Shown here: positions 2,501-62,344 of the stretch, one piece after another
Layout: the number at the start of each line of letters is the position of its first letter
How positions within the stretch are numbered: position 1 is the first letter of the stretch
Assembly (NCBI RefSeq): GCF_001194135.2
Contig: NC_068984.1
Coordinates: 22,190,183 to 22,254,182, forward strand
Length of the DNA stretch: 64,000 nucleotides
Source: Octopus bimaculoides
Lineage: Eukaryota
Direction: 5' to 3'
Notes under the pieces: generated by a model
The model's database searches: none
What the model saw: the letters and a program-made list of their open reading frames with translations, nothing else
What the model was told of the DNA's origin: nothing
Made by a program: the position numbers and the translations under genes

Positions 2501-2716
2501 AAGGCGGTGAGCTGGCAGAGTCGTTAGCACACTCGGCGAAATGCTTAGCAGTATTTCGTCTGCCGTTACGTTCTGAGTTCAAATTCCACCGAGGTCGACT
2601 TTGCCTTGCATCCTTTCGCGGTCGATAAATTAAGTACGAATGAAATTCTGGGGTCGATGATATCGACTAGTCCCCTCCCCCAAAACTCAGGCTTTGTGCC
2701 TATAATAGAAAGGATT
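2501..2716 (+). mobile_element. SINE family B, first unit of a head-to-tail dimer
   Basis: Head AAGGCGGTGAGCTGGCAGAGTCGTTAGCAC, B-box-like GAGTTCAAATTCC, central GGTCGACTTTGCCTTGCATCCTTTCGCGGTCGATAAATTAAGTAC; homologous to 15973, 42813 and other copies. Confidence 0.85.
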
Positions 2717-3454: not shown

Positions 3455-6400
3455 TCCATATCCTCGCAACGCACGTAGATTTAGACAGACAGACAGACAG
3501 ACAGACAGATAGGGAAAAGGAAGAATGCTACACACTTCAGCGAAGAGATAAAACGTGCGTATGGGTGTATACATACATACATAAAAGCATACACACACAC
3601 ATATAAATATATGTACATATACATGTCTGTGCGTGAACAGTATACATTTTATAAATGTATTTGAATGCTTTTCTACATATGTGCGTAACTCTCGGGGCAA
3701 GCCAACAGATATCTTAGAAGTATTACCTCTAAACTACTAAATTACTTCAGTTATACCGGCATGGACATAAATTTTGGAAACAATTGATATATAATAAACA
3801 TGTTAGAAAATACAAATTTAAAAAATACCGTTATTAATCCCTGTGAATACAGTTGTTAAATAATGCGCTCGTTGAATATAATCACTTTTATTGGGGTATC
3901 ATTCGATATTCTATGACAGCTTATCTTTATGGTATCCATAAGTATGGCTATACTGGTTGTCAAATATAATTTAGGTTACGGACCAGCGAATACGCTTGTT
4001 TGTTCCTGCAATTGTATCTTCCGATGAATTCCAAGAATCAACAAAAACTTATCAAAGTGGTGACACCTCTCGAAAGTTTTATGAACTCACACTCTGTCTC
4101 CATATTTTAGTATCTATATGTATTTTTCTATAAACATATATCTGTATACGTGTGATAAAATGAGAAAGAGTGTGAGAGGATAAAAGTATGTCATAATGTT
4201 TAAATGTAATTAATATATAGTAGCAACGTAAATACTATCAAATATATATGATATAAGATACGATACATTCTGCTTTCTTTTATTTCTATTTTCACGGTTA
4301 ATCATTTCGTAAAATACTTTCTTCGAACACATGACATGCCAAGCATTTCCTATCAAAAAATGTGTAATTTTGTCTATGAATAAGATATAAAGAAATAAGA
4401 GATATTTTCTTTTGACATGCCACACATACAGCAGGTCCGATGATATCTAATAAATACAAGCTTACCTTTTCTACTGCAAACGGTATCATTAATCTTATTT
4501 TCTAGTAGATTAACCATCATTATATGCTGTGTGTTTTACACTGAGATTCGTTTGATAGTTCTTTAAAGGGAGAAATGATATATTGCGTATTTCTTTTCCA
4601 CTACCATTTATTCCAGGCAAATGTGAATTACACTAATTCATTTTACTCATTCTAAGACCTGCAGAAACACTTATAAAGTTTGCAGACAACCTTTGTAAAA
4701 TATTTACACACAACCGTTACTTCCACATATCTGTGTGTACATTTGTGAATATATACACCAGAATATTATAGCTTATACGAAGATTTGTAAAATAGACTAA
4801 GTGTTTAGGAAAGCCATTAAGTTGCAACAATGGAGGAAAAAGGCTTGGAATGTTAACAGAAATAAAACATACGCAAGACTAGAACAATGAGTGGAGTCCG
4901 AGCTGACTGCAACAGCGTTCATACGAATAACTAAGTAGTTATATATCTCACACTAACTTTGGCGGCGGGGGACTTGGCATGTGAAGGCTGGTAGTCTTAA
5001 AGTCAGTCATCAGGGCCCACTTCATACCGCATTAATAGTTGGGTTCGGTTTAGTAGCAAAGATATTTTCTTGAATCCTTAAATTTCCGATTTTTTGTTCT
5101 GTCACTTTTGTTGTATCGGTGACCTCTTTGGCGTGACTGTCTGGGAGTCTTTTTGGGGGTTGACATATATATATAAATGATGCTATCGAATTAATACCCA
5201 GCACGTTTATTTCAAGTTATCTGATGTATAATGCTGGATTGTAAACATATATGGAGACTTTTAATAATGCAGTTGGTATATGTGCAAACCTGTGTGAAAT
5301 CGAATCGCCAACGGACATTGTGTTTCATTCTGACACTCAGGGAATCTCCATCTAATTGTTATATGTGAAAACGAACTGCTTTACTATTTTGGTTTATGCA
5401 GACGGTGCTAGCTTGTCTACTATATATAGTTTGAATGCGGATTTGGGTTTATTAAACCCAAAATATCAAAAGTTAAAAAAATAAACAATGCTCCTCTGTT
5501 TTAGATTTGCTCCTGTTTATGGTCCGTTACTTGCATACGTGCATTGTAGTAACATTCTAAAACAGTCTTTTATAAATATATGTTTCCTGGTTCATTTTCA
5601 CTGTGTGACACCTTGGGCAGATGTCTTCTACTATAGCCTCGGGCACAAAATAAAAGTGTTTTGTGTTGCGAAAATCATAAATCATTGAGTTAATAAAATC
5701 ATGCTAAAATTTAGTTTCCTTTTTTGCGTGATTCAGTGTAATAAATTCCATTCAAATGAATAATTGGTCGCTCTATATTCAGTTGTGTGTCACTAAGATC
5801 ATTAAGGTTTAAATTAATTATAATATCGAAAATTATTTTTTGGCCGAACACATGCGCACGTGTGTTTGTATGTATGGTGAATCTCCAATTAGAAATTGTA
5901 GAAGTGAACAAAGTTACCTTTGGGTTTCTTCCACTCAGATTCAATTTATTGAGTTTGTTTACATATGTGCATTAATTGTGCGTGCGTGCGTGCGTGCGTG
6001 CGGGCGGGCGGGCGCGTATGCGCGTATGCATTATTAAATATATGTATTTAAACATTTCTTTATACATGTATGTATATGTACCAGACATCTGTAAACTCCA
6101 AAGTATTCCTTGCAATACATACATTAGATCAAATTTCAGCTCGGAATAAGTGAATTTGAATCTAAGGAAATAGATTCTATATTTCAGTGAAGCCATTAAT
6201 GTTTGTCTGTTTATTACAGCTAAACATTCGGCAGATATAACGGCCATTGCTTGATAACTTTAAATTAAAGTTGTCGTTCTTGTGATGGAGGTGGAATACA
6301 TTAGAATTATATTCATGTGTATTGATTCGTCGATATATAAACCCTGTGAATTGATTGACCGCTCTTGAAATGTCTCATAAATAATTCATTATCGAAAGGC

Positions 6401-6630
6401 TGATATCACTTTACAGTTAATTCATGTCAGAATAGAGAAGGAATATTGTTATATTATAGCATCTCTATAATTACGTGTCAAATCAGTTCGGTTAAGCTAC
6501 TCCAGTAGGTAAGACGTATATGTTATATCATTTTAATTACAGTTTAGCTAGTTTACCTATAAGTGTGTGTCGGAATAGATCGCGATGATGAAAACACATC
6601 GAAGGGCCTGTGAAGTATTGCCTATATGGC

Positions 6631-7030
6631 GATGTATATATGTTTGCCTTTAGATCGTAAAATTGCGAATTAGCCACCCACATTTATATTTTTCACTTTT
6701 ACTGTTTTTGAAATCAGTGTATGATCTCAATGGAAATCTTATAAGCTGACAAGGTGAGATGGGTTTAACCCTGGACGCGGTGAGAGCCACTGATGAGCGT
6801 TAAGATGCATTAATCATCAGAATGCGAAATCATCGATGATCTGGCTGTATCTGCGACCATATGGAGCTTGTCTTTCTTGTCAGCTCATTAAAATAGTGCT
6901 TTTGCTGGCTACTGAGTTGTTTTGACACTTATTTCTAGCAATACTGGTGCTGATTAGTGCTCTTGTTCACTTTAGAGACGTATATATTTTTGCCTTTAGG
7001 TTGTAAAATTGCGAATTAGCCACCCATATT
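6631..7030 (+). mobile_element. Retrozyme-like / Penelope-associated unit: 346-bp period, 54-bp terminal redundancy, one hammerhead
   Basis: 6631-6684 and 6977-7030 match at 49 of 54 positions (offset 346), including an exact GTAAAATTGCGAATTAGCCACCCA. No ORF; contains the hammerhead below. Confidence 0.6.
6772..6859 (+). ncRNA. Type I hammerhead ribozyme, intact core
   Basis: Stem I AGCCA (6785-89) with UGGCU (6842-46); core CUGAUGA (6790-96); stem II GCGUU/AAUGC closing G6797-C6825, plus inner GAUG/CAUC; GAAA (6826-29); palindromic stem III AUCAUCGAUGAU (6829-40); cleavage triplet AUC ending at 6841; distal stem I CGCGG/CUGCG beyond a 4x4 internal loop. Confidence 0.88.
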
Positions 7031-7189
7031 ATTTATAAATGTATATGACAGAGAAATGGACAGACAGACAGACAGACAGACGGATAGATAGATAGATAGA
7101 TGTTATCATTTAGTGGGATTTAAGGAGAATCCCACTGTGCAGAGTCTCCGTGACTCAGACCGGAGAAACGGTATGAATACTTGCAACAA

Positions 7190-7335: not shown

Positions 7336-9074
7336 AAGTACAGTTTTGCCAGTCTATAGTTCCGGATTTGTGTGTGTGTGTGTGTGTGTGTATGTGTGTG
7401 TGTTCACTCTTTTGTGTAACCTTGTTTGGTAATTTCTTATACTGAACCATGATTGAATAGCTTATTATATTGTATGTTAAAGGAAATTAAGCGAACTCGG
7501 CGTCGGCTGACTTCAACTTTGTTAGTGCACATCTATACGAAACACGCGATAGATTCCTATTAAATTGATGGAGTATATTCAGGTTGCCATAGATAAAATG
7601 TCTATGTCTAATATCAGATACGTTAGATAGCTGCAGCACTCCTGTGATATAAAGGCTACCAAATTTCTTTGTATCTTTGCAAGTGTTATATCGCTTGATT
7701 CTCACCGGCAGCATTATTGTTAATTGTGTTTGGCGAATAGAAATGAACACCGCTGTTATCTGTGAGTTAAATACCACGGTTCACAGTTTAAAATGTCTCA
7801 TTTGAACACACAAAAACACATATGAGACAATTTGTCAATGATGTAGAAGTACTTAGTATATATTGTAGAGTGTATTGTCTACAATTAATGTTTTTCTCAT
7901 GACACCTTCCTATATGCACTCCTACTAGAGTCAAGCAAAAAATAATAAATCTTAATATTTGAAATAGTCCTGTTATTGAAGCATCACGTCTATGTATTTC
8001 GGTTTGTGGTGTTAAAGCTTTAAAGGAAGCGGCCTTCGATAAATATGAATCGGATTTTTCAAATTATATTCATAAAACTAGATTTAATAAAATGAAATTT
8101 TGAAGTTTCTTTAATTTTATTGACTTTCTGTTATTTATTCAAGAAAATAGTTCCATAATGAGTGTGATACCTCTCATACAGTTTAATGCGATGCAAGCAG
8201 TGACGAAGACATTCTCATTCTGTTTGTCTGATTTGGTTTTATATTACTCAAAGCTGGGAACAATTTCTCACATGATTACGTTGAGTAGAATATAGTTAAA
8301 GATAGCTTCGTAAGAATTTTAAAAGCACTGACATTTTCGGGAATATGATTCCACACACTCAGATGTTCACAGTGTGGATGTTCATTCACGTTTACACTAT
8401 ATCAATATTCAATTTTTTCTCAATTTTGCTTCCATTTCTAGATATCGTCTGTTCAAGTATCCAACCACATATATTTTCAGATCTGCACATTGGTCAGCAT
8501 ATTTTATTAAAAAAATGTATTGATATTGCTTAATTATAGGCGTTAAAGCTTGTACGAGTCGTTTTACACATTATTCATGATTCTTACATTTATTTTTATT
8601 TTTTTCAGAAAGTTTCTCCATCTTTGGAAAATACGTGGAACCTTTACTCTCTATATCACGTTCAAATATGCCGAATTTACTCAGACGATTTGGTTAAAAT
8701 AAATGTAACGTCAATAGATTTCCCTAATCAGATGCAATAGAAATCCGTAAAAAGCGCTTACTGAGCAAAAGCAAAATCTTTTAATCGACCACAAACTCAT
8801 GGTCCATGGTTTTATTATTTAAAAATAATAGATTTTCACTTAATCATACGTGACCACGAATTAACAGTAAACAACTTTTCATTAGTAAACTACACCGGAC
8901 AAATTCAAAGCATGCGCAGAATTGACAAGTCATAAGAAAAGCGAAGCGTGTTTGTTGTTCCCGCTCCAATATATATTGTTTTAATACAAGTCTATGAAAA
9001 GATTTTGCCTCAGACAATTTAAGAGCAGTGTACCTTCTAACGATGTATATACATTTAGTATGATTATATATGTA

Positions 9075-9163
9075 CTCTTTTATTCTTTCCCTTGTTTCAG
9101 TCATTTGACTGTGGCCATGCTGGACCATCATCTTCAGTCGAATAAATCGACCCCAGGACTTAT
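9075..9163 (-). mobile_element. SINE family A, 3' tail fragment
   Basis: CTTGTTTCAGTCATTTGACTGTGGCCATGCTGGA...TCGACCCCAGGACTTAT is the reverse complement of the family A tail. Confidence 0.8.
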
Positions 9164-9375
9164 GTATATATTGATCGTTAGATAGAGAAAGAGAGAGTGT
9201 ACGTGTTGGGGAGGGGTTAGACAGATATGTTACTGTATGTATCTTGTCAGGGTGAGTTTTCCTATAAGAAACTCTCACACTGGGATCTTCTAAAACATAT
9301 AGTAAACGTTANNNNNNNNNNTTTTATAAATTGATTTTAATTGAGTTTTTTACCTGTAATTTTGGATTTTGTCCC

Positions 9376-11754: not shown

Positions 11755-11832
11755 AAAGTGCTGCGCTGTGGAGCCGAAGCGGAGCCTACATGATTGCGGG
11801 GAAGAGTTTTTAACCACACAGCCATGCTTGTA
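11755..11832 (-). mobile_element. SINE family A-related head fragment
   Basis: Reverse complement TACAAGCATGGCTGTGTGGTTAAAAACT...CCACAGCGCAGCACTTT; shares diagnostic bases with 12801-12930. Confidence 0.6.
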
Positions 11833-11844
11833 TCTGTACATCAG

Positions 11845-11995
11845 CAGGTGTGGCAAGAAGCTTGCTTCCCAATCATATGGTTCGAGTACAGTCCTACTGC
11901 GTGGCACCTTGGGCGAGTGTCTTCTAGTATAGCCTGGGGCCGACGAAGCCGTGTGAGTGGATTTGGTAGAAAGAAACTGAAAGAAGCCCGTCGCG

Positions 11996-12046
<51 letters not shown>

Positions 12047-12259
12047 ACGTGTCTTTGTGCCTGTGTTTGTCCCCCCCCCATCGCTTAACAACCGATGTTG
12101 GTGTGTATGCGTCCCTGGAAACTAGCGGTTCGGCAATAGAGACGGATAAAATAAGTACTAAGCTTACAAAGAATAAGTCTTGGGGTCGATTTCTTCGACT
12201 AAAGACGGTGCTCCAGCATGGCTGCACTCAAATGACTGAAACGTATAAACGAGTAAAAG
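11845..12259 (+). mobile_element. SINE family A, near full length
   Basis: Head, CORE-like GCACCTTGGGCGAGTGTCTTC, internal (TA)n and tail GGTGCTCCAGCATGGCTGCACTCAAATGACTGAAAC. Confidence 0.85.
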
Positions 12260-12800
12260 CGTATATAAACAAGTACATCAATAGTGGCAAAACCATTTCC
12301 CCAGTTTCCCAAATAATATTTGAAGAATAAATCATTCTATGATTAATGAGTGTCGCATGCATGAATATATTTGTTAGGGTCTTTTTTGAAATCAAATCAG
12401 TCCGGAAAAAAAAGTTTAAGATAATTACAAACACAAGCAGATACTTTCTCTATCTCACCCCACCTCACAAACATGTGAATACACAATATGAACGCACACG
12501 TATGTGTGTATATGTTTAGCGGGAGAGAAGAGGATGATTATTAGCTTAAAGAAAACGAACTTCCGCCCCACATGTGAGGAGATACTTACTTGTCTTTGTA
12601 TTATTGGTCATTCGGCGTGTGCCGTGCACGTTTTGAACAATACTAAACCACAAAATTGATCCACAGATTCTTAGAAGATATGAGTACTGTCAGTCTTCAT
12701 TAAATTAAGGTTTCAAGACTGAAAATATCCCTAATCCGCCCTATATANNNNNNNNNNTGTGTGTGTGTGCGTGTGTGTGTGTTATAACGGACATATATTT

Positions 12801-16163: not shown

Positions 16164-16696
16164 ATAGTTGCACACAGTTTTTCTACACCATAAATGCCCC
16201 AGTGATTGGATGTATCTTGTGAGATTTATGAGGGTCTAACTTAATATGCATGTATTTGTTTATGTCTTACTGTCTGTGTTTGTCCCCACTACCAATTAAA
16301 AACCAATACCAGTGTGTTTATGTCCCCATAAGTTAGCGGTTCGCCACAAAATATCGATAGAATAAGTAACATGTTTCGAAAATATAACCACCATGGCTGC
16401 TGTTTAATAATAAACTCTTATTAACTTCAATATCTCCATTTTCTTATTCTTCATATGTATTTATATATATATAGATAAATATCATAAATATATAGGGATT
16501 GACAGTAACCTGCTTCTCCAACATACTGAGAATTCAGAAATAGCAGTCAAAGAACTACTGATTTCAAAACTACAAATTATTACTCCAGATTGATAGCGAT
16601 ATTTTTGATACACACAGAACAAAAAACATTATTACTAATTGATGATTCCCTGCCCTGCATATCTATATAGATAAATAGATATGTTTGTGTAAGTGC

Positions 16697-17090
16697 AGGC
16701 ATCGTTGTGTAGTAAGAAGCCCGCTTCCCAACCACATGGTCCCTAGTTGACTCCCACTGGGTGGCACCTTCGGCACGTGTCTATAGCTTCGGGCCGACAA
16801 AAGCCTTGAGTGGATTTGGTAGAGGGAAACTGGAAGAAGCCCGTCACATATTATCTATATCTCTACGTGTCTGTGTGTCCTTGTGTCTGTTCCCCCACCA
16901 TCATGGCTTGACAACAGGTTTTGTTGTGTTTACGTCCCCGTGAAATGGCATTTCGGTAAGAGAGATCGATAGAATAAATAAAAAATAGGTCCTGGTGTCG
17001 ATTTGTTGGACTAAAATCCTTCAATGAAGTGCTCCAGCATGGTTATAGTCAACTGACTAAAACAAGTAAAAGAAAAAAATAGATAAAAGA
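16697..17090 (+). mobile_element. SINE family A, diverged full length
   Basis: All family A modules in order, ending GTGCTCCAGCATGG...TGACTAAAACAAGTAAAAGA. Confidence 0.8.
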
Positions 17091-18667: not shown

Positions 18668-18694
18668 AATATATATATATATTTATATATTTGG

Positions 18695-18880
18695 GTCTTT
18701 GCCCCCCATTATCGCTTGACAACCAACGTTGATGTGTTTTTATCTCCCCGTAAGCTAGCGGTTCGGCAAAGTAGACCGATAGAATAAGTACTAGGCTTAC
18801 AAAGAATAAGTCCAGGGGTCGATTTCTTCGATTAAAGGTGGCCGCAGTCAAATGGCTGAAACAATTAAAAGCAAAAGTAA
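18695..18880 (+). mobile_element. SINE family A, 3' half
   Basis: GCGGTTCGGCAAA...GACCGATAGAATAAGTACTAGGCTTACAAAGAATAAGTCC...GGCCGCAGTCAAATGGCTGAAAC. Confidence 0.85.
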
Positions 18881-18924
18881 ATATACTCATGTTTTGAACT
18901 ATTTTTCCTGTTTTCGTCAACAAA

Positions 18925-18960
<36 letters not shown>

Positions 18961-19354
18961 CGCGAGCGCTTTAATATTTCGCTTCAGCATTGTGGGACTT
19001 CAATATTTCGTTTACTCATTGTAGAAATCAATGTACGTATATTTCAGAACAAAGTATTACATGAGTATAGGGCGGTAATAAGACAAATAGATGACTAAGC
19101 TCAACTGAGAGTCCACTGCGTCAGATAGCAGAAACAACTGTAAGCTAATGAAGTTCATAACATACCTACTGTTTTTCCTGTGTCATCTCTTTTTCTTAAA
19201 CACACACACAGATACACACATACATATGTATACCCTGGTGTCTGACAAGATAAATTCGTTCTAAGCGTCCGCGAAACTTTTAGTCATATGAAGCTGAGCC
19301 AAGCTATTATTAAATGTATACATGCGTGTGTATGTTTTTGCGCGCGCGTATTTG

Positions 19355-19391
<37 letters not shown>

Positions 19392-19884
19392 ACACGCAGC
19401 TGTTCATGAAATTTAATCCTGGTTTTTAATGCTAGTATTATTTAGGTGTGTCTAATAGTGTTGACGGTAATAATGGAAGGTAACGAAAGACAGAGCTAAG
19501 GTTTTGAAAGGATCTACTTAACGATGCGTCAATAAAATGGAAGACGTTCATACGTAACCACCATCCGAGTTGTTACTTCAGAGATTATGTATAAATATTT
19601 GCAAATAATATTTAAATGCGCCGAAAGATCAAATTCACGTTGGTCGTATCCAATTATAATTGACCTTTGATATTGTATCCCTGTCACTCAGTTAATCTGC
19701 CAAAACCACACTGTTATACTACAATAGCTGCACAATATTGTTAATATCTGACATTAAGACTTTGCAGTCCTATCTGATAGTGTACGAACTATTTTAGGAT
19801 GTTTAGTTTGCTAACTCTGACTTCTGAATTTCAACAACCACTCAGCTTGGATTAAGCTTTACAGCCTTTTCAATAACATGTGTA

Positions 19885-20251
19885 TATGTGGTTAGTAGCT
19901 TGCTTACCAGCCACATGGTTTCGGATTCAGTCCCACTGCGTGGCTTGTTGGGCAAGTGTCTTCTACTATAGCCTCGGGCAGACAAAAGCCCGTCGTATAT
20001 TTGTATATATATATATGTGTGTGTGCGTGTGTATATGTTTGTGCGTCTGTGTTTGGCTCCACCCAACATCGCTTGACAACGGTGTTGGTGCGTTTACGTC
20101 CTCGTAATTTAGCGGTTCGGCAAAAAAATGACCGATAGAATAAGTGCGAGGCTTACAAAGAATAAGTCCTGCGGTCAATTTGCTCAACTAAAGGTGGTGC
20201 TCCAACATGGTCACAGTCAAATGACTGAAACAAGTAACACAGTAAAGAGAG
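19885..20251 (+). mobile_element. SINE family A with an internal deletion
   Basis: Head and tail intact; the segment between two AAGCC motifs is missing relative to 43844-44248. Confidence 0.85.
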
Positions 20252-43571: not shown

Positions 43572-43843
43572 GGAGAGGGGGGAGAGAAAAATATGTATGT
43601 ATGATGAACATGGTAACGTAATAAATATATACATTGATGTAAATTGCCAGTACATAGATACGCTCTCTCACCCATACACACATACATATATACATACATA
43701 CGCACGCACAAACACGCACGCATTATAGCTTGATAAATGTCATTACGAAACTCTCAACGTTGAGTGACTTATGTAAAAGTTTGCCGATCATATATATATA
43801 TACATGTTACTCCCGTTTGTCCCGCAAAAGGCATATATATATA

Positions 43844-44248
43844 GGAGTGGCTGTGGGGTAAGTAGCTTGCTTACCAACCACATGGTCCCGGGTTCAGTCC
43901 CACTGCGTGGCATCTTGGGCAAGTGTCTTCTACTATAGCCTCGGGCCGACCAAAGCCTTGTGAGTGGATTTGGTAGACGGAAACTGAAAGAAGCCCGTCG
44001 TATATATGTATATATATATATATGTATGTATGTATGTATGTGTGTCTGTGTTTGTCCCCCCAACATCGCTTGACAACCGATGCTGGTGTGTTTATGTCCC
44101 CGTAACTTAGCGGTTCGGCAAAAGAGACCGATAGAATAAGTACTAGGCTTCTAAAGAGTAAGTCCTGGGGTCGATTTGCTCGACTAGAGGCGGTGCTCCA
44201 GCATGGCCGCAGTTAAAAGACTGAAACAAGTAAAAGAGTAAAAGAGTA
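43844..44248 (+). mobile_element. SINE family A, most intact copy
   Basis: A-box-like TGGCTGTGGGG, B-box-like GGTTCAGTCC, CORE-like CTTGGGCAAGTGTCTTC, internal (TA)n/(TG)n, and tail GCGGTGCTCCAGCATGGCCGCAG...GACTGAAACAAG(TAAAAGAG)2; sits in TA-rich flanks. Confidence 0.9.
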
Positions 44249-47168: not shown

Positions 47169-47287
47169 TATCACGGCCATATCACGTTGAAAGCACCGGT
47201 TCTCGTCCGATCACCGAAGTTAAGCAACATCGAGCCTAGTTAGTACTTAGATGGGTGACCGCTTGGGAACCCTAGGTGCTGTAAGCA
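47169..47287 (+). rRNA. 5S rRNA-derived copy (retrocopy or SINE head; first 4 nt replaced)
   Basis: ACGGCCATATCACGTTGAAAGCACCGGTTCTCGTCCGATCACCGAAGTTAAGCAACATCGAGCCTAGTTAGTACTTAGATGGGTGACCGCTTGGGAACCCTAGGTGCTGTAAGCA: 119-nt span, recognisable internal A and C boxes, followed by TTCTTTTT. Single copy rather than an array. Confidence 0.93.
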
Positions 47288-47401: not shown

Positions 47402-47441
<40 letters not shown>

Positions 47442-51240: not shown

Positions 51241-51417
51241 TAACCCTTGGAGGACGCCTCTGCTAGCTGGTTATTTTTGCAACCAGCGCCCGATACATAT
51301 TGCAAGTAGGGGACTGTCTCTAGGGGATGAATATTCACCACGGGGGAGGATCATAGAGAGCTCGAAACAGTACGGTCTGGTGGTCTCGAGGCTGAAGGAG
51401 GCGTCTTCCTGGGGTTA
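51241..51417 (+). ncRNA. Structured hairpin element enclosing a decayed type I hammerhead
   Basis: 51241-60 pairs with 51398-417 at 19 of 20 positions. Inner CACCA/UGGUG stem I, mutated core CGGGGGA, G-C closed stem II, then GAAA-C...G-GUC. Confidence 0.55.
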
Positions 51418-60889: not shown

Positions 60890-61810
60890 GCGCGCGTGTG
60901 TGTGTGTGCGTGTGCGTACACACACACACACACACACATATGTACATATATACACATATATATATATACACATATATACACATATATAAACATATATACA
61001 GACATATATACACATATATACACACATATATAAACACATATATACACACATATATACACACATATATACACACATATATAAACACATATATACACACATA
61101 TATACACACATATATACACACATATATACACACATATATACACACATATATACACACATATATACACACATATATAAACATATATATACACACATATATA
61201 AACATATATATACACACATATATAAACATATATATACACATATATAAACATATATATACACACATATACACACATATATACACACATATACACACACACA
61301 TATATATATATATATACACACACACATATACAAGCATATATTTATATATAAACNNNNNNNNNNNNNNNNNNNNNNNNNNNNNNNNNNNNNNNNNNNNNNN
61401 NNNNNNNNNNNNNATATATAAACATATATATACACACATATATAAACATATATATACACACATATATAAACATATATATACACCCATATATAAACATATA
61501 TACACACATATATAAACATATATATACACACATATATAAACATATATATACACACACATATATAAACATATATATACACATATATAAACATATATATACA
61601 CACATATATAAACATATATATACACATATATAAACATATATATACACATATATAAACATATATATACACACATATACACATATATACACACATATACACA
61701 CACACATATATATATATATACACACACACATATACAAGCATATATTTATATATAAACACATTCACACACATATTTATATATACATATATAAACACATTCA
61801 CACACACACA
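60890..61810. repeat. Compound (CA)/(TA) satellite with 12-bp and 24-bp higher-order units, spanning a gap
   Basis: Units TATATACACACA and TATATAAACATATATATACACACA; N-gap at 61354-61413. Confidence 0.95.
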
Positions 61811-61958
61811 CATATATATGTACGCATACATCTGCACACATTTAAATAAAAAGCTTATGTTTATTGAGACAAGCGGATGAAGAACGCAATTTAACTGTCT
61901 CCTAGTTAACACACCATCACTGATGTGTGGTTATATATATATATGAAGCTGGCAACAG

Positions 61959-62066
61959 TATGATTATATGTAAAAGAACATATGATTATATGTAAAAGAA
62001 CATATGATTATATGTAAAAGAACATGATTACATGTAAAAGAACATATGATTATATGTAAAAGAACA
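61959..62066. repeat. 22-bp minisatellite, five units
   Basis: TATGATTATATGTAAAAGAACA repeated directly five times; the fourth unit is a 20-bp variant. Confidence 0.95.
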
Positions 62067-62344
62067 TTACCAGACAGTGTTATGTTCGTGCCTTACTCGT
62101 ATGTCTCAACACATATATCTATTTGACCCAGATACGCCACTAATCAAATATAGAAATTACTTTTAAACTCGAGTAAATGTATTTAAGAAACAGACAGTGA
62201 AACTCGACTACAGTTAGACGAGATACATCTGGCCAGTGAAAATCCTTTAAACACCAGTGCCAAATCCGATAGGACATATTTCATTGAGAGTAATGTAAAT
62301 TCACAGTGAAGGTTACTTGATCAGTGCAGGTTTCATCAGTATTT

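What the first reader, a model, noticed from the sequence alone, without database searches (positions are those of the whole stretch)
6772..6859. Intact type I hammerhead ribozyme in otherwise featureless DNA
Seen: all conserved core nucleotides are present (CUGAUGA 6790-96, G6797-C6825, GAAA 6826-29, U6840-C6841). All three stems pair. Stem III is a perfect 12-nt palindrome that could fold as 4 bp plus a UCGA loop or pair between two copies. Stem I continues past a 4x4 internal loop (CGCGG/CUGCG, then UGG/CCA). Established: type I hammerheads, often with short or palindromic stem III, occur in newt satellite 2, Schistosoma Sm-alpha, Penelope-like elements and metazoan non-LTR retrozymes, and stem I bulge to loop II contacts speed up cleavage. 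Inference: this RNA should self-cleave after C6841.
Basis: partly seen in the sequence, partly recalled or inferred. Interest (0 to 1): 0.9.

Follow-up and report, generated by a model that had tools for sequence, protein, structure and literature searches.

The report
Lone hammerhead ribozyme in retroelement relic
The sequence carries every required piece of a self-cutting "hammerhead" RNA, and it sits in a roughly 350-base non-coding mobile-element copy of a kind already known from many animals, so it looks real but ordinary.

Summary
All conserved hammerhead nucleotides and all three helices are at the stated coordinates. It is the only such motif in the window, and a match this good is expected by chance in about 2 of 10,000 such windows.

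The DNA around it is not featureless.
- Helix I runs on for 36 base pairs (6744-6789 with 6842-6885). It folds much better on the + strand than on the - strand.
- The ribozyme lies inside a 346-bp unit (6631-6976). The unit's first 54 bp recur at 6977-7030, so the locus holds 1.16 units.
- Helix III is a full palindrome, as in four published, tested animal retrozyme hammerheads.

Best reading: a canonical type I hammerhead in a single "solo" copy of a non-LTR retrozyme-like retroelement. With one ribozyme it can cut a transcript once, after C6841, but cannot release a circle.

Weak points:
- Rfam gives no hit at its thresholds. The best match is Hammerhead_HH9 at 14.4 bits against a cut-off of 52.
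- A model I built from the four published ribozymes scores the candidate 12.8 bits, which is not significant.
- No paralogue could be found, because no animal genome collection was available.
- The lowest-energy fold ties up the catalytic box.
- Cleavage is untested.

Verdict: a new member of a known kind, of modest interest.

The parts
6631..6976 (+). One full 346-bp non-coding repeat unit that contains the ribozyme (GC 38%)
   Evidence: The direct repeat 6631-6684 / 6977-7030 has a spacing of 346. No open frame in the unit exceeds 49 aa. The circular monomer folds at -88 kcal/mol, z -2.0, with 62% of bases paired.
6977..7030 (+). Partial second unit (54 bp 'tail'), 91% identical to 6631-6684
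6744..6789 (+). 5' arm of helix I, both the proximal part and its long extension
   Evidence: It forms 36 pairs with 6842-6885, 28 Watson-Crick and 8 G-U. The 151-nt hairpin 6740-6890 folds at -58.4 kcal/mol, z -5.3, with 0 of 200 shuffles as good. The - strand reaches only -45.3.
6790..6796 (+). Catalytic box CUGAUGA (C3-A9)
6797..6825 (+). Helix II: 5 bp (G10.1-C11.1 first), a 2x2 internal loop AA/AG, then a 4-bp hairpin with a 7-nt loop. This is unusually long for a type I hammerhead.
   Evidence: Both covariance models treat the extra 17 nt as an insertion.
6814..6820 (+). UCAUCAG, a perfect complement of the CUGAUGA box and a possible competing or switching pairing
   Evidence: Read directly from the sequence. 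This pairing forms in the predicted dimer lowest-energy fold.
6826..6829 (+). GAAA (G12 A13 A14 A15.1)
6829..6840 (+). Helix III, the 12-nt perfect palindrome AUCAUCGAUGAU. It can fold as 4 bp plus a UCGA loop, or form a 12-bp duplex between two copies (-15.5 kcal/mol).
   Evidence: Helix III is also a palindrome in the coral, mussel and two axolotl retrozyme ribozymes (sequences).
6841..6842 (+). C17 and the predicted cleavage site, between C6841 and U6842
   Evidence: Position relative to the core. Cleavage itself is inferred, not shown.
6842..6885 (+). 3' arm of helix I

Best explanation
This is a genuine canonical type I hammerhead ribozyme on the + strand. It lies in a single, slightly longer-than-unit (1.16 x 346 bp) genomic copy of a non-coding, non-LTR retrozyme-like retroelement.

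**How it would work (inferred from the family).**
- The + strand is transcribed.
- Helix I, extended here into a 36-bp rod, together with helices II and III, assembles the CUGAUGA/GAAA core.
- The RNA cuts itself after C6841. This leaves a 2',3'-cyclic phosphate on the upstream piece and a 5'-OH on U6842.
- In tandem source loci, two such cuts release a 346-nt monomer.
- A host RtcB-type tRNA ligase circularises the monomer.
- A retrotransposon reverse transcriptase, probably of a Penelope-like element, copies the circle or multimer. This gives insertions slightly longer than one unit, like this one.

This locus has only one ribozyme. It can cut a read-through transcript once but cannot release a monomer, so it is a dead-end 'solo' copy.

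Helix III is weak and fully palindromic. Cleavage may therefore be better when two copies pair through it (a double hammerhead) than as a monomer.

**Shown here:** the motif, the pairings, the strand-specific structure and the repeat-unit architecture.
**Inferred:** transcription, cleavage, circularisation and mobilisation.
For: - All conserved nucleotides and all three helices are present.
- It is the only hammerhead in the window, with a chance rate of 2e-4 per window at 5/5/4-bp stems.
- Rfam's HH9 model aligns it in the correct register.
- Helix I extends to 36 bp with 8 G-U pairs. The + strand folds at -58.4 kcal/mol (z -5.3) and the - strand at -45.3. This points to RNA-level pairing on the ribozyme's own strand.
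- The unit is 346 bp with a 54-bp terminal repeat, 38% GC, and has no ORF, LTR or tRNA-like part. This fits published non-LTR retrozymes: 150-450 bp, GC below 50%, and mussel units of 350-390 bp (PMC7229834).
- Solo monomers are reported for the family (bioRxiv 10.64898/2026.07.22.740005).
- Partial tandems and 30-40 bp tails are typical of Penelope-like insertions (PMC8557442).
- Helix III is a palindrome, and the CA|CUGAUGAG and C|UGG flanks match the four experimentally active retrozyme hammerheads.
Against: - There is no Rfam hit at gathering score. The best is 14.4 bits against 52, seen only in a 76-nt search.
- My own covariance model scores it 12.8 bits, E 0.27, rank 2 in the window.
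- No second copy exists in the window.
- Nothing related turned up in three protein-space searches, an exact-ORF look-up, or metagenome, viral and prokaryote DNA scans. None of these collections suits animal repeats.
- No target-site duplication was found.
- The circular monomer is only modestly structured (z -2.0).
- The lowest-energy fold sequesters the core. The hammerhead-compatible fold makes up 0.4% of the modelled ensemble.
- At about 9% divergence between the two 54-bp copies, an intact ribozyme would survive neutral decay roughly one time in six. Intactness is therefore not evidence of selection.
Confidence: 0.7

Rival explanations
1. It is a chance hammerhead-like motif inside an unrelated hairpin-forming sequence, and it has no ribozyme function.
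For: - At 2e-4 per 64 kb, a genome of a few Gb would hold several chance matches.
- Both covariance-model tests are non-significant.
- The region is rich in GAUGA/UCAUC words, which make alternative pairings easy.
- No paralogue has been seen.
Against: Chance would also have to supply all of the following together:
- a 36-bp + strand-biased extension of helix I (z -5.3);
- a fully palindromic helix III (about 1 in 16);
- G10.1-C11.1 and the GAAAY/RUH context;
- placement inside a partly duplicated 346-bp unit. Only about four non-simple local direct repeats exist in the 64 kb.
Confidence: 0.12
2. It is a real hammerhead, but it belongs to a fragment or solo pseudo-LTR of an autonomous Penelope-like element rather than to a retrozyme.
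For: - Penelope-like elements carry type I hammerheads in their pseudo-LTRs, insert as partial tandems with short tails, and favour microsatellite targets.
- An (AGAC)n(AGAT)n run starts 30 bp downstream of the element.
- Retrozymes are argued to derive from such pseudo-LTRs.
Against: - Hammerheads of Penelope-like elements are minimal variants that lack helix III and the loop contacts. This one has a 4-bp helix III and long helices I and II.
- No Pfam domain (reverse transcriptase, GIY-YIG or any other) appears in the open frames tested within about 3 kb on either side.
Confidence: 0.1
3. It is a Schistosoma Sm-alpha-like SINE: a pol III-transcribed short interspersed element that happens to carry a hammerhead.
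For: The unit length (about 340 bp) and the hammerhead type are similar. Reviews treat non-LTR retrozymes as a kind of SINE.
Against: ARAGORN and Rfam detect no tRNA-like or 5S-like head. I saw no convincing A or B box by eye.
Confidence: 0.05
4. It is a C/D box snoRNA, because UGAUGA is also a C box.
For: There are weak Rfam matches to several C/D snoRNA families: 12.7-16.8 bits against cut-offs of 36-70, E 0.9-8.
Against: No CUGA D box lies next to the 3' arm of the terminal stem; the sequence there is GAUC|UGGCU. All scores are far below threshold, and the matches rest on the shared UGAUGA word.
Confidence: 0.02

Closest known systems
Metazoan non-LTR retrozymes (Cervera & de la Pena 2020, PMC7229834), especially the 350-390 bp units of the mussel Mytilus galloprovincialis
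   Same: - It has a canonical type I hammerhead with a palindromic helix III.
- The unit is AT-rich, non-coding and about 350 bp, with no LTR, PBS or PPT.
- The ribozyme sits at the end of a long paired arm.
- The CA|CUGAUGAG and C|UGG context is shared.
   Different: - Only 1.16 units and a single ribozyme are present, not a tandem array.
- There is no sequence similarity to the mussel unit outside the core.
- Helix II carries an extra internal loop and hairpin (29 nt in all).
- Helix III is 4 bp, making a 12-nt palindrome.
- Copy number and circular RNA are unknown.
Newt/axolotl satellite 2 hammerheads (Amex1/Amex2)
   Same: They are type I, have a palindromic helix III that allows double-hammerhead dimers, and sit in units of about 330-350 bp.
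   Different: The amphibian helix III is 1-2 bp and their helix II is short, with the canonical loop contacts. Here helix III is 4 bp and helix II is long.
[quoted passage not shown]
   Same: They share the type I topology, the retroelement setting and the partial-tandem or 'tail' insertion architecture.
   Different: Those motifs lack helix III and the loop contacts, and they lie next to an RT/GIY-YIG ORF. Neither is true here.
Rfam Hammerhead_HH9 (RF02275), the intronic type I hammerhead of amniotes
   Same: It is the only Rfam hammerhead model that aligns the candidate, and it does so in the correct register.
   Different: The score is 14.4 bits against a gathering score of 52. Only model positions 15-58 of 77 are matched, with a 17-nt insertion in helix II. 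The candidate is not a member.

Membership tests
Hammerhead ribozyme, type I | Conserved core: C3 U4 G5 A6 N7 G8 A9, G12 A13 A14, A15.1-U16.1, H17 (the CUGANGA / GAAAY / RUH rule) | tested here: met
   6790-6796 is CUGAUGA, 6826-6830 is GAAAU, and 6839-6841 is AUC.
Hammerhead ribozyme, type I | Three helices around the core, with helix I open-ended and helices II and III closed | tested here: met
   All pairs were listed and checked. The descriptor scan passes at 5/5/4 bp.
Hammerhead ribozyme, type I | Match to a curated covariance model at its gathering score | tested here: not met
   There is no hit at gathering score. The best is HH9 at 14.4 bits against 52. My own model from four published ribozymes gives 12.8 bits, E 0.27.
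Hammerhead ribozyme, type I | Tertiary contact between the helix I internal loop and loop 2 | tested here: inconclusive
   A 4x4 internal loop lies 5 bp from the core in helix I, and a 2x2 internal loop lies 5 bp from the core in helix II. Helix II has no closing loop at that point, and the contact nucleotides cannot be judged from one sequence.
Hammerhead ribozyme, type I | Site-specific self-cleavage 3' of H17 | not testable with these tools
   This needs in vitro transcription. The energy model predicts a competing fold, -29.8 against -26.3 kcal/mol.
Non-LTR retrozyme (metazoan) | Tandem array of 150-450 bp units with at least two consecutive units carrying complete hammerheads (the criterion for an 'active' retrozyme) | tested here: not met
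   The locus has 1.16 units and one hammerhead. It fits the 'monomer / solo retrozyme' category.
Non-LTR retrozyme (metazoan) | Non-coding unit with GC below 50% and no LTR, PBS or PPT | tested here: met
   GC is 38%. The longest open frame is 49 aa. The only terminal repeat is the 54-bp partial unit.
Non-LTR retrozyme (metazoan) | The monomer folds as a highly self-paired circular RNA | tested here: inconclusive
   The circular fold is -88 kcal/mol, z -2.0, with 62% of bases paired. The ribozyme arm alone gives z -5.3.
Non-LTR retrozyme (metazoan) | A multi-copy family in the genome, expressed as linear and circular RNA | not testable with these tools
   No animal genome or transcriptome collection was available. 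There is no second copy in the window, and indirect searches were empty.
Non-LTR retrozyme (metazoan) | Target-site duplications longer than 4 bp (when present) | tested here: not met
   The best flank-to-flank alignment is no better than shuffles; 107 of 500 shuffles score at least as high.
Penelope-like element pseudo-LTR hammerhead | A minimal hammerhead without helix III, next to an RT/GIY-YIG ORF | tested here: not met
   Helix III is 4 bp. No Pfam domain appears in the open frames tested within about 3 kb on either side.
C/D box snoRNA | A C box and a D box (CUGA) brought together by a terminal stem | tested here: not met
   UGAUGA is present, but no CUGA lies before the 3' stem arm. Rfam scores are 12.7-16.8 bits against cut-offs of 36-70.

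The most novel reading that the evidence does not exclude
This may be a hammerhead variant with a built-in conformational switch, from a lineage where retrozymes have not been described. The lineage is possibly a cephalopod, judged only from my memory of the window's SINE-like repeats.

The extra hairpin on helix II carries UCAUCAG, a perfect complement of the catalytic CUGAUGA box. The 5' arm of helix III offers a second partial complement. The RNA could therefore toggle between a cleaving fold, favoured in dimers through the 12-nt palindrome, and a locked fold that protects the ligated circle.
Probability: 0.12. Interest if true: 0.5.

Novelty: new member of a known kind. Interest (0 to 1): 0.3.

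Why it matters
If the ribozyme is active and the unit is multi-copy, it would add a retrozyme family from another animal lineage. Its hammerhead is missed by the curated Rfam models because of a long helix II. That shows covariance-model annotation can undercount such ribozymes where descriptor-based searches find them. The complementarity between the helix II extension and the catalytic box would also give a simple system for studying how circular-RNA retroelements switch their ribozyme off after processing. As a single degenerate-looking copy, its biological effect at this locus is probably nil.

Tried and rejected
- **Rfam.** The whole window at gathering score gave only a 5S rRNA. A search of 6650-6950 at E<=10 gave no hammerhead family. 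Only the 76-nt search gave a sub-threshold HH9 match.
- **Own covariance model.** I built it from the coral, mussel and two axolotl retrozyme hammerheads printed in the supplement of PMC7229834. It does not separate the candidate from background: 12.8 bits, rank 2. The top hit, 51335-51383, lacks the catalytic box.
- **Paralogues in the window.** blastn with word size 7 found none. TRF does not report the 346-bp period because there are too few copies.
- **Relatives elsewhere.**
  - An exact-ORF look-up found nothing.
  - Three protein-space searches found nothing. Two used frames across the element, and one used a SINE-like ORF to identify the organism.
  - The pattern scan of metagenome contigs gave one hit. 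It lies in apparently coding DNA and lacks the helices, so it is a chance match.
  - Scans of viral contigs and prokaryote genomes were empty.
- **Homology to the mussel retrozyme outside the core.** None.
- **Target-site duplication.** None.
- **Coding remnants of a Penelope-like element.** Stop-free segments within about 3 kb on either side gave no Pfam hit.
- **tRNA-like SINE head.** None.
- **C/D snoRNA reading.** Rejected because there is no D box.

Full report

Yes. Reading 6600-7020 and checking each pair by script confirms the following:
- CUGAUGA lies at 6790-6796.
- Helix II opens with G6797-C6825. It is GCGUU/AAUGC, then an AA/AG internal loop, then GAUG/CAUC closed by CAUUAAU.
- GAAA lies at 6826-6829.
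- AUCAUCGAUGAU at 6829-6840 is a 12-nt palindrome that can form 4 bp plus a UCGA loop.
- U6840 and C6841 follow.
- Helix I is AGCCA/UGGCU, followed by a 4x4 internal loop, CGCGG/CUGCG and UGG/CCA.

The motif also satisfies the CUGANGA / GAAAY / RUH filter that the retrozyme authors apply (supplement of PMC7229834).

**2. Is it more than chance?**

A descriptor scan of both strands finds this one hammerhead and no other, even at relaxed stem lengths. I replaced the catalytic boxes with 5,039 composition-matched scrambled decoys and rescanned the real sequence.
- Stems of 5/4/3 bp gave 10 decoy hits, or 2e-3 per window.
- Stems of 5/5/4 bp gave 1 decoy hit, or 2e-4 per window. The candidate passes this setting (a smaller run agrees).

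That is rare for one window. In a genome of a few Gb, though, several chance matches would be expected, so the motif alone is not decisive.

**3. Covariance models give weak support.**

- Rfam at gathering thresholds reports only a 5S rRNA gene.
- A permissive search of 6650-6950 lists no hammerhead family.
- Only a 76-nt search brings up Hammerhead_HH9, at 14.4 bits against a gathering score of 52 and E 0.22. The register is correct: helix I, CUGAUGA, helix II with a 17-nt insertion, GAAA, helix III, UC, helix I.
- I built a model from four experimentally active retrozyme hammerheads (coral, mussel and two axolotl; sequences, alignment, model). It scores the candidate 12.8 bits, E 0.27. A site without the catalytic box ranks above it.

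Both models treat the long helix II and helix III as insertions or local ends.

**4. The context is what makes the case.**

The DNA is not featureless.

*(a) Helix I is a long, strand-specific rod.*
Positions 6744-6789 pair with 6842-6885 in 36 pairs, 28 Watson-Crick and 8 G-U.
- The 151-nt hairpin 6740-6890 folds at -58.4 kcal/mol, z -5.3, with none of 200 dinucleotide shuffles as good.
- The complementary strand reaches only -45.3.
- G-U pairs become C-A mismatches on the other strand. An 8-to-1 excess of G-U over A-C juxtapositions (binomial 0.02) therefore points to pairing at the RNA level, on the ribozyme's own strand.

*(b) The ribozyme lies in a partly repeated unit.*
- The unit is 346 bp, at 6631-6976. 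Its first 54 bp recur at 6977-7030 with 91% identity, so the locus holds 1.16 units.
- Only about four non-simple local direct repeats of this kind occur in the whole window.
- The unit is 38% GC, has no open frame above 49 aa, and has no tRNA-like part.

*(c) It resembles the four published ribozymes.*
- All four have a fully palindromic helix III: ACAGUACUGU, ACGCGCGU, ACACGUGU and ACAUGU.
- All four share the CA|CUGA(U/G)GA and (C/A)|UG flanks seen here.

**5. What it most likely is.**

These features match metazoan non-LTR retrozymes. That family has type I hammerheads in AT-rich, non-coding repeats of 150-450 bp (350-390 bp in mussel), without LTR, PBS or PPT. The repeats are expressed as self-paired circular RNAs (PMC7229834; PMC7761336).

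A recent survey reports that 'monomer' or solo copies of such families are common and scattered. It counts only arrays with at least two ribozyme-bearing units as active (bioRxiv 10.64898/2026.07.22.740005).

Penelope-like elements are the proposed mobilisers. They insert as partial tandems, often with a 30-40 bp terminal 'tail' (PMC8557442). The 54-bp partial second unit fits that pattern. I therefore read the locus as a solo retrozyme-like copy.

The mechanism is inferred from the family, not shown here:
- The + strand is transcribed.
- The RNA cleaves after C6841.
- In tandem source loci, this releases a 346-nt monomer.
- RtcB-type ligation circularises it.
- Reverse transcription of the circle or multimer follows.

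With one ribozyme, this copy can only cut a transcript once.

**6. Reasons for caution about activity.**

- The lowest-energy fold of the 88-mer is not the hammerhead. UGAUGA pairs with UCAUCG, the 5' arm of helix III. That fold is -29.8 kcal/mol, against -26.3 for the best fold with the core left free. The hammerhead-compatible fold makes up 0.4% of the modelled ensemble.
- CUGAUGA is also perfectly complementary to UCAUCAG at 6814-6820, in the helix II extension. That pairing appears in the predicted dimer fold.
- Helix III alone is not stable as a hairpin (0.0 kcal/mol). As a 12-bp duplex between two copies it gives -15.5 kcal/mol. Dimeric action, as in the newt and axolotl ribozymes, is therefore plausible.
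- Energy models ignore the tertiary core, so none of this is a refutation.

**7. No sign of selection on this copy.**

The two 54-bp copies differ at 5 of 54 positions. If they were identical at insertion, about 40 constrained ribozyme positions would escape all substitutions roughly one time in six. An intact motif is therefore compatible with neutral survival.

**8. Rival readings.**

- *Chance motif (0.12).* It needs several independent coincidences; see sections 2 and 4.
- *Penelope-like pseudo-LTR fragment (0.10).* Those hammerheads are minimal and lack helix III. No reverse transcriptase, GIY-YIG or any other Pfam domain appears in the open frames tested within about 3 kb on either side.
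- *Sm-alpha-like pol III SINE (0.05).* No tRNA-like or 5S-like head was found.
- *C/D snoRNA (0.02).* The weak Rfam matches rest on the shared UGAUGA word, and there is no D box.

**9. What could not be done.**

No animal genome or transcriptome collection was available, so conservation in paralogues, the decisive test, remains open. The indirect routes were all empty or gave chance matches:
- an exact-ORF look-up;
- three protein-space searches;
- pattern scans of metagenome, viral and prokaryote contigs.

No target-site duplication was found. There is no similarity to the mussel unit outside the core.

The source organism is unidentified. The window is a 33% GC animal-like draft assembly with N gaps and many microsatellites. 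Its SINE-like repeats remind me of cephalopod SINEs, but that is from memory and was not tested.

**10. Verdict.**

This is most likely a real canonical type I hammerhead in a solo retrozyme-like retroelement copy. It is a new member of a known kind and of modest interest. Two details are unusual: a helix II long enough to defeat the curated models, and a built-in complement to the catalytic box.

Noticed in passing
window 47169-47287 (+): A solitary 5S rRNA gene scores 103 bits against RF00001. Several pairs in its terminal helix are non-standard, and an (AC)n run follows at 47405. It may be a dispersed pseudogene or a 5S-derived element rather than part of a 5S array.
   Followed up: no
window 8847-9308 (-), 11794-12327 (+), 18669-18983 (-), 19845-20250, 43791-44212 (-), 16313-16369 and 16925-16981: There are many copies of a SINE-like repeat. 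One frame reads ...KSWGRF(L/I)RLK..LQHG(H/C)(S/T)QMTET.... From memory it resembles abundant cephalopod SINEs. A protein-space search with one copy found nothing, so the organism remains unidentified.
   Followed up: partly
window 2551-2684 and 2766-2899: A 134-nt direct repeat, 80% identical, has a spacing of 215 bp. It may be two adjacent copies of another short interspersed repeat.
   Followed up: no
window 7060-7101: An (AGAC)n(AGAT)n microsatellite begins 30 bp downstream of the element's end. Penelope-like insertions are reported to favour microsatellite targets, but no link was shown here.
   Followed up: no
window 5730-6075: A 346-nt control window folded unusually well (-102 kcal/mol, z -4.1). 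It holds a GC-rich (GTGC)n/(GCGG)n tract at 5978-6030, so the cause is probably low-complexity self-complementarity.
   Followed up: no
window 60936-61848 and 61954-62067: There is a long AT/AC-rich satellite-like array with nested periods of 8-70 bp, followed by a separate 22-bp tandem repeat (AACATATGATTATATGTAAAAG, 5 copies).
   Followed up: no
window 51335-51383 (+): This is the top hit of my four-sequence hammerhead model (14 bits, E 0.12). It reads CGGGGGA where CUGAUGA should be, so it is a false positive and shows how little that model discriminates.
   Followed up: yes
L001 355-399 (metagenome contig Ga0208544_10079291): This is the only external match to the pattern CTGATGAG...GAAATCATCGATGATC. 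It lies in what looks like coding DNA, and helices I and II do not pair, so it is a chance match.
   Followed up: yes
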